The translations under genes were made by a program, and so were the position numbers. From Octopus sinensis (Eukaryota), in contig NC_043007.1 of the NCBI RefSeq assembly GCF_006345805.1, positions 25,110,001-25,174,000 on the forward strand: a stretch of DNA of 64,000 nucleotides, given 5' to 3'. Positions 118 to 55,991 of this stretch are shown in pieces; within the stretch, counting starts at the first letter, position 1; every line of letters begins with the position of its first letter. Below the pieces are notes generated by a model. That model saw only the letters and a list, made by a program, of their open reading frames with translations. It did not search any database and was not told where the DNA came from.

Positions 118-55991
<55,874 letters not shown>

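What the first reader, a model, noticed from the sequence alone, without database searches (positions are those of the whole stretch)
31202..31207. Hidden 6-nt microexon (AAAAAG) with a UGC motif that toggles a polybasic patch in the EF-hand region
Seen: E7 ends in phase 1 and E9 starts GT CAG, so direct joining gives KKGK-S-QL. Inside the 4-kb intron lies tgcttacag|AAAAAG|gtaagt, with consensus sites, a UGC just before the AG and a pyrimidine tract set further back (tttttcttctttcatttc). Inclusion gives KKGK-KKG-QL, the sequence I recall for squid/cuttlefish PLC21. Established: UGC near the 3'ss with a displaced pyrimidine tract is the signature of SRRM3/4 (eMIC)-dependent neural microexons. 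Inference: a neuron- or retina-regulated switch adding two lysines to a basic surface; gene predictors would miss it.
Basis: partly seen in the sequence, partly recalled or inferred. Interest (0 to 1): 0.78.

Follow-up and report, generated by a model that had tools for sequence, protein, structure and literature searches.

The report
Real 6-base exon in cephalopod PLC21
The six bases AAAAAG are a genuine tiny exon of a cephalopod phospholipase C-beta (PLC21) gene, supplying the Lys-Lys-Gly found in the squid and cuttlefish proteins; nothing available here could test whether it is ever skipped as a regulated switch.

Summary
The motif is present as described, but on the minus strand: tgcttacag|AAAAAG|gtaagt, with AAAAAG at window 31207..31202. 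It lies in a 4,054-nt intron of a PLC-beta gene (PH, EF-hand, X, Y and C2 domains). I mapped 23 exons of this gene from 55991 down to 7088.

The PDB sequences of Loligo pealei PLC21 (3QR1) and Sepia officinalis PLC21 (3QR0) both read ...[19 protein letters not shown].... That is exactly the exon-included product. The window protein is 87.9% identical to 3QR1.

Of 87 in-frame, stop-free AG..GT candidates in the intron, AAAAAG ranks first. It alone has a strong donor and alone encodes KKG (chance expectation 0.015 per intron).

Two other invertebrate PLC-beta loci have the same phase-1 intron in the Gly codon but no microexon. In most homologues whose alignment crosses this point the protein is two residues shorter here. 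So the exon is real, conserved in coleoids and lineage-specific.

The "toggle" and SRRM3/4 (eMIC) claims are only consistent with the sequence. Supporting features are UGC at -9, an 86-nt AG-free zone, CUAAU at -77, an 18-nt pyrimidine tract at -63..-46 and a strong 5' splice site. No RNA-seq or other cephalopod genome was available, and only the included form has any evidence.

Verdict: a correct, modestly interesting new member of a known kind.

The parts
31202..31207 (-). 6-nt microexon AAAAAG. It supplies the last two bases of one Lys codon, a whole Lys codon, and the first base of a Gly codon (residues 293-295 in 3QR0/3QR1 numbering).
31208..31209 (-). 3' splice site AG (context ttacag|A). 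The proximal pyrimidine content, 0.55, is among the lowest of the gene's 23 acceptors.
31214..31216 (-). UGC motif at -9..-7 from the exon
   Evidence: motif meaning
31253..31270 (-). Displaced 18-nt polypyrimidine tract tttttcttctttcatttc, at -63..-46
31280..31284 (-). CUAAU, candidate branch point (branch A about -74). It sits near the start of the AG-free zone.
   Evidence: sequence match only; not shown to be used
31210..31295 (-). 86-nt AG exclusion zone upstream of the acceptor
   Evidence: only 1.5% of intronic AGs have at least 85 AG-free nt upstream. It ranks 3rd of the 23 acceptors of the gene.
31196..31201 (-). 5' splice site gtaagt (AAG|GTAAGT), 7.7 bits, fourth strongest of the 22 scored GT donors
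32966..33129 (-). Its donor AAA|gtgtgt is below the gene's median (1.4 bits).
28765..28911 (-).
31208..32965 (-). Upstream intron, 1,758 nt
28912..31201 (-). Downstream intron, 2,290 nt
7088..55991 (-). PLC21-type PLC-beta gene, 23 mapped exons encoding 774 aa (PH, EF-hand, X, Y, C2 and the start of the C-terminal region). The exon for residues 1-33 was not found in the window.

Best explanation
AAAAAG (31207..31202, minus strand) is a genuine protein-coding microexon of a cephalopod PLC21 (phospholipase C-beta) gene.

What it does: splicing upstream exon -> microexon -> downstream exon makes ...NKKGK-KKG-QLTKEG..., adding two lysines and restoring a Gly-Gln that is common in PLC-beta1/PLC21-type enzymes. 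The site is in the last EF-hand-like module, just before the catalytic X domain. This is the mature form of the enzyme, at least in retina, the tissue from which the squid and cuttlefish PLC21 clones were obtained (tissue source from my memory of Lyon et al. 2011).

How it evolved: it is a coleoid-lineage insertion of exactly 6 nt at an ancient phase-1 intron. In other invertebrates the upstream exon itself ends ...AAA G|gt and joins directly to GT-CAx.

How it is probably recognised (inferred): a near-perfect 5' splice site (AAG|GUAAGU) compensates for a weak proximal 3' region. The branch point (CUAAU, about -74) and pyrimidine tract (-63..-46) sit far upstream, across an 86-nt AG-free zone, with a UGC at -9.

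My commitment: the exon is included by default in photoreceptor and neural cells, where the gene is mainly used, probably with help from a microexon enhancer of the Srrm234/eMIC type. Skipping, if it occurs, is a minor or non-neural outcome.

Shown: the exon exists, what it codes, its conservation and its layout. Inferred: the branch point, enhancer dependence and tissue pattern.
For: - Orthologue proteins: 3QR1 and 3QR0 read [19 protein letters not shown]. The window model is 87.9% identical to 3QR1 over 744 aa.
- Residue accounting: all aligned orthologue residues map to ordinary exons except K293 and K294; the tblastn match to the downstream exon begins at G295.
- Gene model: with the microexon, the 23 exons give one continuous 774-aa reading frame that matches the orthologues.
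- Uniqueness: best of 87 candidates, the only strong donor, the only KKG-coding site, chance expectation 0.015.
- Domain context: PH, EF-hand, X, Y and C2 domains, with the site inside EF-hand_like.
- Ancestral structure: loci L001 and L002 have the same phase-1 intron without a microexon.
- Insertion: in most of the 29 homologues whose alignment crosses the junction, the aligner places a 2-residue gap here.
- Layout: AG-free zone 86 nt, UGC at -9, CTAAT at -77.
- Literature: long AG exclusion zone, UGC close to the 3' splice site, long pyrimidine tract, strong CUAAY and strong 5' splice site are the published eMIC-exon architecture. The eMIC domain is said to date to bilaterian ancestors.
Against: - No transcript from this species was seen, so inclusion here is inferred from orthologues and intact splice signals.
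- The window species differs by about 12% from the two reference proteins and could in principle have changed exon usage.
- The eMIC-like layout has low discriminating power here. Other acceptors in this gene also have long AG-free zones (median 47 nt; four others of 80 nt or more). Four of 22 have a TGC within 20 nt, and one ordinary exon (11910) has both.
- The cephalopod branch-point consensus is unknown.
- The claim that the reference cDNAs came from retina rests on memory; the paper is not held.
Confidence: 0.9

Rival explanations
1. One reading: a regulated switch. The microexon is included only in neurons or retina under Srrm234/eMIC control. Elsewhere it is skipped, giving KKGK-S-QL, an enzyme of ancestral length with two fewer lysines and Ser in place of Gly.
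For: - Skipping keeps the reading frame.
- The exon is a lineage-specific addition, so the skipped form has the ancestral spacing.
- The known included sequences come from retina (from memory).
Against: - No skipped transcript or protein was seen anywhere.
- Skipping replaces a Gly that is common in PLC-beta1/PLC21-type homologues.
- The UGC and the AG-free zone are not rare among this gene's ordinary exons.
- Nothing here shows that the gene is expressed outside neural tissue.
Confidence: 0.3
2. A purely constitutive microexon. It is always included wherever the gene is transcribed, recognised through its very strong 5' splice site and ordinary factors, with no regulatory role.
For: - Only the included form is known, and it is identical in three coleoid species.
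- The donor is near consensus.
- The Gly-Gln it restores is common in relatives.
Against: - A 6-nt exon with a weak proximal 3' region and a distant branch point is the class that, in flies and mammals, usually needs a dedicated enhancer.
- The upstream exon's own donor scores below the gene's median (1.4 bits).
Confidence: 0.55
3. A chance motif. The hexamer is not spliced in this species, and the protein here reads KKGKSQL.
For: In principle, 87 in-frame AG..GT decoys exist in the intron, and no transcript from this species was seen.
Against: The chance expectation for a KKG-coding site with AG and GT is 0.015 per intron, and this one also carries the best donor in the intron and an 86-nt AG-free zone. 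Orthologues have exactly these residues.
Confidence: 0.03

Closest known systems
Loligo (Doryteuthis) pealei PLC21 and Sepia officinalis PLC21 (PDB 3QR1, 3QR0)
   Same: Orthologous enzyme: 87.9% identity over 744 aa to 3QR1. The sequence NKKGKKKGQLTKEG across the microexon is identical.
   Different: They are from other species and are known only as proteins/cDNAs here. Their gene structure could not be examined, so it is not shown that their KKG also comes from a 6-nt exon.
SRRM3/4 (vertebrates) / Srrm234-eMIC (flies) dependent neural microexons
   Same: Length 6 nt and in frame. UGC close to the 3' splice site, long AG exclusion zone, distant pyrimidine tract and CUAAY branch site. Strong 5' splice site as in mammalian targets. 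The host is a signalling gene used in photoreceptors.
   Different: Tissue-specific inclusion and factor dependence, the two defining properties, are untested. The pyrimidine tract is U-rich with UCU but has no CUC or alternating UCUC run.
PLC-beta genes of other invertebrates (loci L001 from SRR30767268; L002 from ERZ21854012)
   Same: The same phase-1 intron inside the Gly codon that precedes (Q/H/F)(L/I)S.
   Different: In L001 the upstream exon ends ...AAA G|gtcagt and joins directly, with no microexon. These proteins are two residues shorter here.

Membership tests
Phospholipase C-beta, PLC21 type | PH, EF-hand, X, Y and C2 domain order | tested here: met
   PH_14 6-115, PLCB1-4-like_EFh 122-194, EF-hand_like 190-281, PI-PLC-X 294-441, PI-PLC-Y 482-596, C2 618-710
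Phospholipase C-beta, PLC21 type | Close sequence relationship to characterised cephalopod PLC21 | tested here: met
   E = 0 and 87.9% identity to 3QR1; next best is PLC-beta3 at about E = 1e-200
Coding microexon (27 nt or less) | 3-27 nt, flanked by AG and GT, keeps the reading frame, and its product is present in the mature protein | tested here: met
   6 nt, cag|..|gtaagt, frame kept; KKG present in the orthologous proteins. Product presence is shown in orthologues, not in this species.
eMIC (SRRM3/4, Srrm234) dependent neural microexon | UGC between the pyrimidine tract/branch point and the AG, close to the 3' splice site | tested here: met
   TGC at -9..-7. Base rate in this gene: 4 of 22 other acceptors within 20 nt.
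eMIC (SRRM3/4, Srrm234) dependent neural microexon | Long branch point-to-AG distance / long AG exclusion zone, with displaced pyrimidine tract and strong CUAAY | tested here: met
   AG-free zone 86 nt, 18-nt pyrimidine tract at -63..-46, CTAAT at -77. The branch point is predicted, not mapped.
eMIC (SRRM3/4, Srrm234) dependent neural microexon | Strong 5' splice site (mammalian targets) | tested here: met
   7.7 bits, fourth of 22 donors. Fly targets instead have weak 5' splice sites.
eMIC (SRRM3/4, Srrm234) dependent neural microexon | Neural or photoreceptor-enriched inclusion, skipped elsewhere | not testable with these tools
   No cephalopod RNA-seq or transcripts in any collection searched
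eMIC (SRRM3/4, Srrm234) dependent neural microexon | Inclusion lost when the eMIC-bearing factor is removed | not testable with these tools
   Needs an experiment
eMIC (SRRM3/4, Srrm234) dependent neural microexon | An Srrm234 gene with an eMIC domain in this genome | not tested
   Not in the window. The literature states the domain arose in bilaterian ancestors.

The most novel reading that the evidence does not exclude
The cephalopod phototransduction-type PLC-beta carries a lineage-specific, Srrm234/eMIC-dependent 6-nt microexon. Photoreceptors and neurons would then make a +Lys-Lys, Gly-restored enzyme with a KKGKKKG basic loop in the EF-hand module. Other tissues would make the ancestral-length Ser form. 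This would extend the neural microexon programme to a lophotrochozoan with an independently evolved complex eye and brain, and would link it to G-protein/PLC signalling.
Probability: 0.3. Interest if true: 0.55.

Novelty: new member of a known kind. Interest (0 to 1): 0.35.

Why it matters
Practical: any gene model for this locus that joins the two flanking exons directly is wrong by two residues and turns a Gly into Ser. The correct protein needs the 6-nt exon.

Biological: it is a clean example of a microexon that arose as a lineage-specific insertion at an old intron position. It sits in an enzyme central to rhabdomeric phototransduction and carries the cis-layout that marks eMIC-dependent exons in flies and mammals. 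If it proves to be tissue-regulated, it would be an easy entry point for asking whether the neural microexon programme operates in cephalopods. It would also let one test whether a basic EF-hand loop tunes PLC-beta membrane or G-protein interaction.

As it stands the product is already known from published squid and cuttlefish proteins, so the surprise is limited.

Tried and rejected
- Homologue search with the junction peptide: best hit 54% identity and no cephalopod protein in the collection, so no isoform comparison was possible.
- Exact look-up of the ORF over the downstream exon: not on record, so the species and other assemblies could not be identified.
- Scan of metagenome contigs: 219 relatives, none closer than 54% over the whole query and none cephalopod. 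These were useful only for the spacing survey.
I took this to rule out structure prediction of the spliced protein as well and did not try it.
- Lyon et al. 2011 (source of 3QR0/3QR1): not held under DOI or PMC3168981. The tissue source of the cDNAs is therefore from memory.
- Literature searches for PLC21 plus cephalopod, microexon plus cephalopod, and Srrm234 plus mollusc/octopus: nothing on this exon.
- Other ways to encode KKG, rejected. Read-through of the upstream exon hits a stop (AAA AGT GTG TAA). The other GT donors and the cag|CTG acceptor 5 nt downstream give poor scores or products (for example KKGKSLTKEG) that do not match the orthologues.
- A suspected second hidden exon in the X-Y linker, rejected. 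The missing residues are encoded by extending exon 21352..21279 upstream ([11 protein letters not shown]...).
- A target-site-duplication origin, considered because GAAAAAG occurs at both ends of the upstream intron. Rejected as stated, because removing the intron plus one repeat copy breaks the frame. The heptamers are explained by Lys codons plus splice-site G's.
- Search for the first coding exon upstream of 55991: none found in the window.

Full report
**1. The observation**

The motif is on the minus strand. Read 5'->3' on that strand, window 31216..31196 is tgcttacag|AAAAAG|gtaagt. AAAAAG occupies 31207..31202, the UGC is at -9..-7, and the tract tttttcttctttcatttc is at 31270..31253 (-63..-46).

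The upstream exon ends ...AAC AAG AAA GGA AAA A|gtgtgtaa at 32966, in phase 1. The downstream exon starts tatacacag|GT CAG CTG ACA at 28911. The direct join gives KKGK-S-QLTKEG and inclusion gives KKGK-KKG-QLTKEG.

**2. What the gene is**

Minus-strand reading frames across about 49 kb carry PLC-beta sequence. A search of PDB sequences hit Loligo pealei PLC21 (3QR1) and Sepia officinalis PLC21 (3QR0) at E = 0. I used the 3QR1 residues shown in those alignments as a guide.

- I mapped 23 exons from 55991 to 7088. Concatenated, they give one uninterrupted 774-aa reading frame.
- Pfam finds PH_14, two EF-hand modules, PI-PLC-X, PI-PLC-Y and C2 in the canonical order.
- Identity to 3QR1 is 87.9% over 744 aa.
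- In the 155-aa region around the site, the window differs from squid and from cuttlefish at about 10 positions each. Those two differ from each other at about 6 (my count). So the window species is probably an outgroup to both; this is inference.
- The exon for residues 1-33 was not found in the window.

**3. Is the microexon real?**

Yes, on four independent grounds.

(a) Both reference proteins read [19 protein letters not shown], exactly the included product.

(b) In the tblastn mapping, the aligned guide residues fall in ordinary exons except K293 and K294; the match to the downstream exon begins at G295. The upstream exon's trailing base is A, so a direct join gives AGT (Ser). Only a piece ending in G restores GGT (Gly).

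(c) The intron is 4,054 nt and contains 87 in-frame, stop-free AG..GT candidates of 3-30 nt.
- AAAAAG ranks first by combined score.
- It is the only candidate with a donor of at least 7.5 bits.
- It is the only AG|ARAARG|GT in the intron.
- First-order Markov resampling of the intron sequence expects 0.015 such sites.

(d) Its acceptor has an 86-nt AG-free zone. Only 1.5% of intronic AGs have 85 nt or more, whereas genuine acceptors of this gene have a median of 47 nt.

No alternative donor or acceptor choice can encode KKG.

**4. Evolutionary context**

Two unrelated invertebrate PLC-beta loci recovered through homologue hits have an intron at the same place and phase.
- In L001 the upstream exon ends ...AGC AAA G|gtcagt and the next exon starts ccag|GT CAT CTC, giving ...ASKGHLSQEGF.
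- L002 starts ttag|GA TTC ATT.

So the intron is old, and ancestrally the upstream exon supplied the G of the Gly codon directly.

Across the 29 homologous contigs whose alignment spans this point, the aligner places a 2-residue gap here in most of the PLC-beta-type sequences (also PLC-beta3). A Lys/Arg-Gly before x-(L/I/M)-S is common in the PLC-beta1/PLC21 type but not universal.

The microexon is therefore a lineage-specific 6-nt insertion. It is shared by at least three coleoids at protein level, and the skipped product would have the ancestral length but Ser where Gly usually sits.

The spliced mRNA carries an A10 run (GGAAAAA+AAAAAG+G) that does not exist in the genome. Origin by A-run expansion followed by intron gain, or by exonisation plus a G-to-A change at the end of the upstream exon, are both possible. 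Neither could be tested.

**5. How it is probably recognised**

The layout, 5'->3', is:
- previous AG at -90/-89
- CUAAU at -77..-73
- an 18-nt U-rich tract at -63..-46
- a short (UA) run
- UGC at -9..-7
- CAG|AAAAAG|GUAAGU

Proximal pyrimidine content is 0.55, among the lowest of the 23 acceptors, and the generic acceptor score is -1.5 bits. The donor scores 7.7 bits, fourth of 22. The upstream exon's donor (AAA|gtgtgt, 1.4 bits) is below the gene's median.

Published descriptions of eMIC-dependent exons list the same features. They cite long AG exclusion zones, UGC close to the 3' splice site, long pyrimidine tracts, strong CUAAY branch sites, strong 5' splice sites (in mammals) and a bipartite UCU_CUC[N1-50]_UGC enhancer. 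They also state that this code is largely specific to eMIC targets rather than to short exons in general, and that the eMIC domain dates to bilaterian ancestors.

The match is real but low-powered here.
- 4 of the 22 other acceptors have a TGC within 20 nt.
- Four others have AG-free zones of 80 nt or more.
- One ordinary exon (11910) has both.

**6. What remains open**

Whether the exon is ever skipped, in which tissue, and whether Srrm234/eMIC is needed could not be addressed.

The reference cDNAs came from retina as far as I recall (paper not held). That fits both constitutive and neural-specific inclusion.

I commit to default inclusion in photoreceptor and neural cells, probably enhancer-assisted. 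I give a real tissue switch a probability of about 0.3.

The functional idea (a more basic EF-hand loop, KKGKKKG against KKGKS) is plausible but untested. The EF-hand module of PLC-beta3 is a G-beta-gamma contact surface on membranes. That makes a surface-loop change there worth testing, but it is not evidence.

**7. Verdict**

- The regulated-toggle and SRRM claims are untested hypotheses consistent with the sequence.
- The product is already known at protein level, so this is a new member of a known kind and of modest interest.

Noticed in passing
window 27949-27950 (minus strand), after exon 28102..27951: This intron appears to use a GC donor (TTC AGG|gcaagtatc). It is the only boundary that reproduces the orthologue sequence ...CTEVAFR|DVVEAIAE; no GT donor there keeps the frame and the residues.
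   Followed up: partly
window 31127-31177 and 31430-31496: (TA)25 and (TA)34 arrays flank the microexon, lying 19 nt downstream of the gtaagt donor and about 220 nt upstream of the exon. As RNA they are predicted to pair into a duplex of about 50 bp that loops out the microexon with all its signals (MFE -91.7 kcal/mol, z = -7.4). However, (TA)n arrays are common here: 16 arrays of at least 12 units in the window, and six pairs of neighbouring arrays less than 400 nt apart.
   Followed up: partly
window 29189-29260 (+), inside the intron downstream of the microexon: Rfam tRNA match just above the gathering score (32 against 29 bits), but ARAGORN calls no tRNA anywhere in the window. It is probably a tRNA-derived repeat or pseudogene.
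   Followed up: partly
window 32436-32704: A 130-nt inverted repeat (89% complementary, 9-nt spacer) in the intron upstream of the microexon. It seems to be two head-to-head copies of a short repeat whose translation ([11 protein letters not shown]...LAWRTDVKR) recurs many times across the window on the minus-strand frames.
   Followed up: no
window 30301-30344 / 30722-30765, and 29815-29905 / 29991-30081: Two MITE-like pairs of inverted repeats (44 nt at 98% and 91 nt at 89% complementary) in the intron downstream of the microexon.
   Followed up: no
window 32965-32971 and 31202-31208 (minus strand): The same heptamer GAAAAAG sits at both ends of the upstream intron: the exon end plus the donor G, and the acceptor G plus the microexon. 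A simple target-site-duplication origin breaks the reading frame, so this is probably Lys codons plus splice-site G's. The spliced mRNA gains an A10 run that is absent from the genome.
   Followed up: partly
window 17298 (minus strand), end of exon 17382..17298: A very poor donor (GTA GA|gtatcc, -5.6 bits) is nevertheless the only one that reproduces the orthologue sequence EDFVD|YNKRQL.
   Followed up: partly
window 3208-3387 (minus strand): An open frame rich in Gly/Pro/Lys repeats (...[24 protein letters not shown]) lies downstream of the last mapped exon. It may be part of the PLC21 C-terminal linker or unrelated low-complexity sequence. The PDB constructs end before this region.
   Followed up: no
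loci L001 (Logan SRR30767268) and L002-L004 (ENA metagenome assemblies): Genomic contigs of unidentified invertebrates carry compact PLC-beta genes with short introns. Prokaryote-style gene calls read through these introns, so the database "proteins" contain intron translations.
   Followed up: partly
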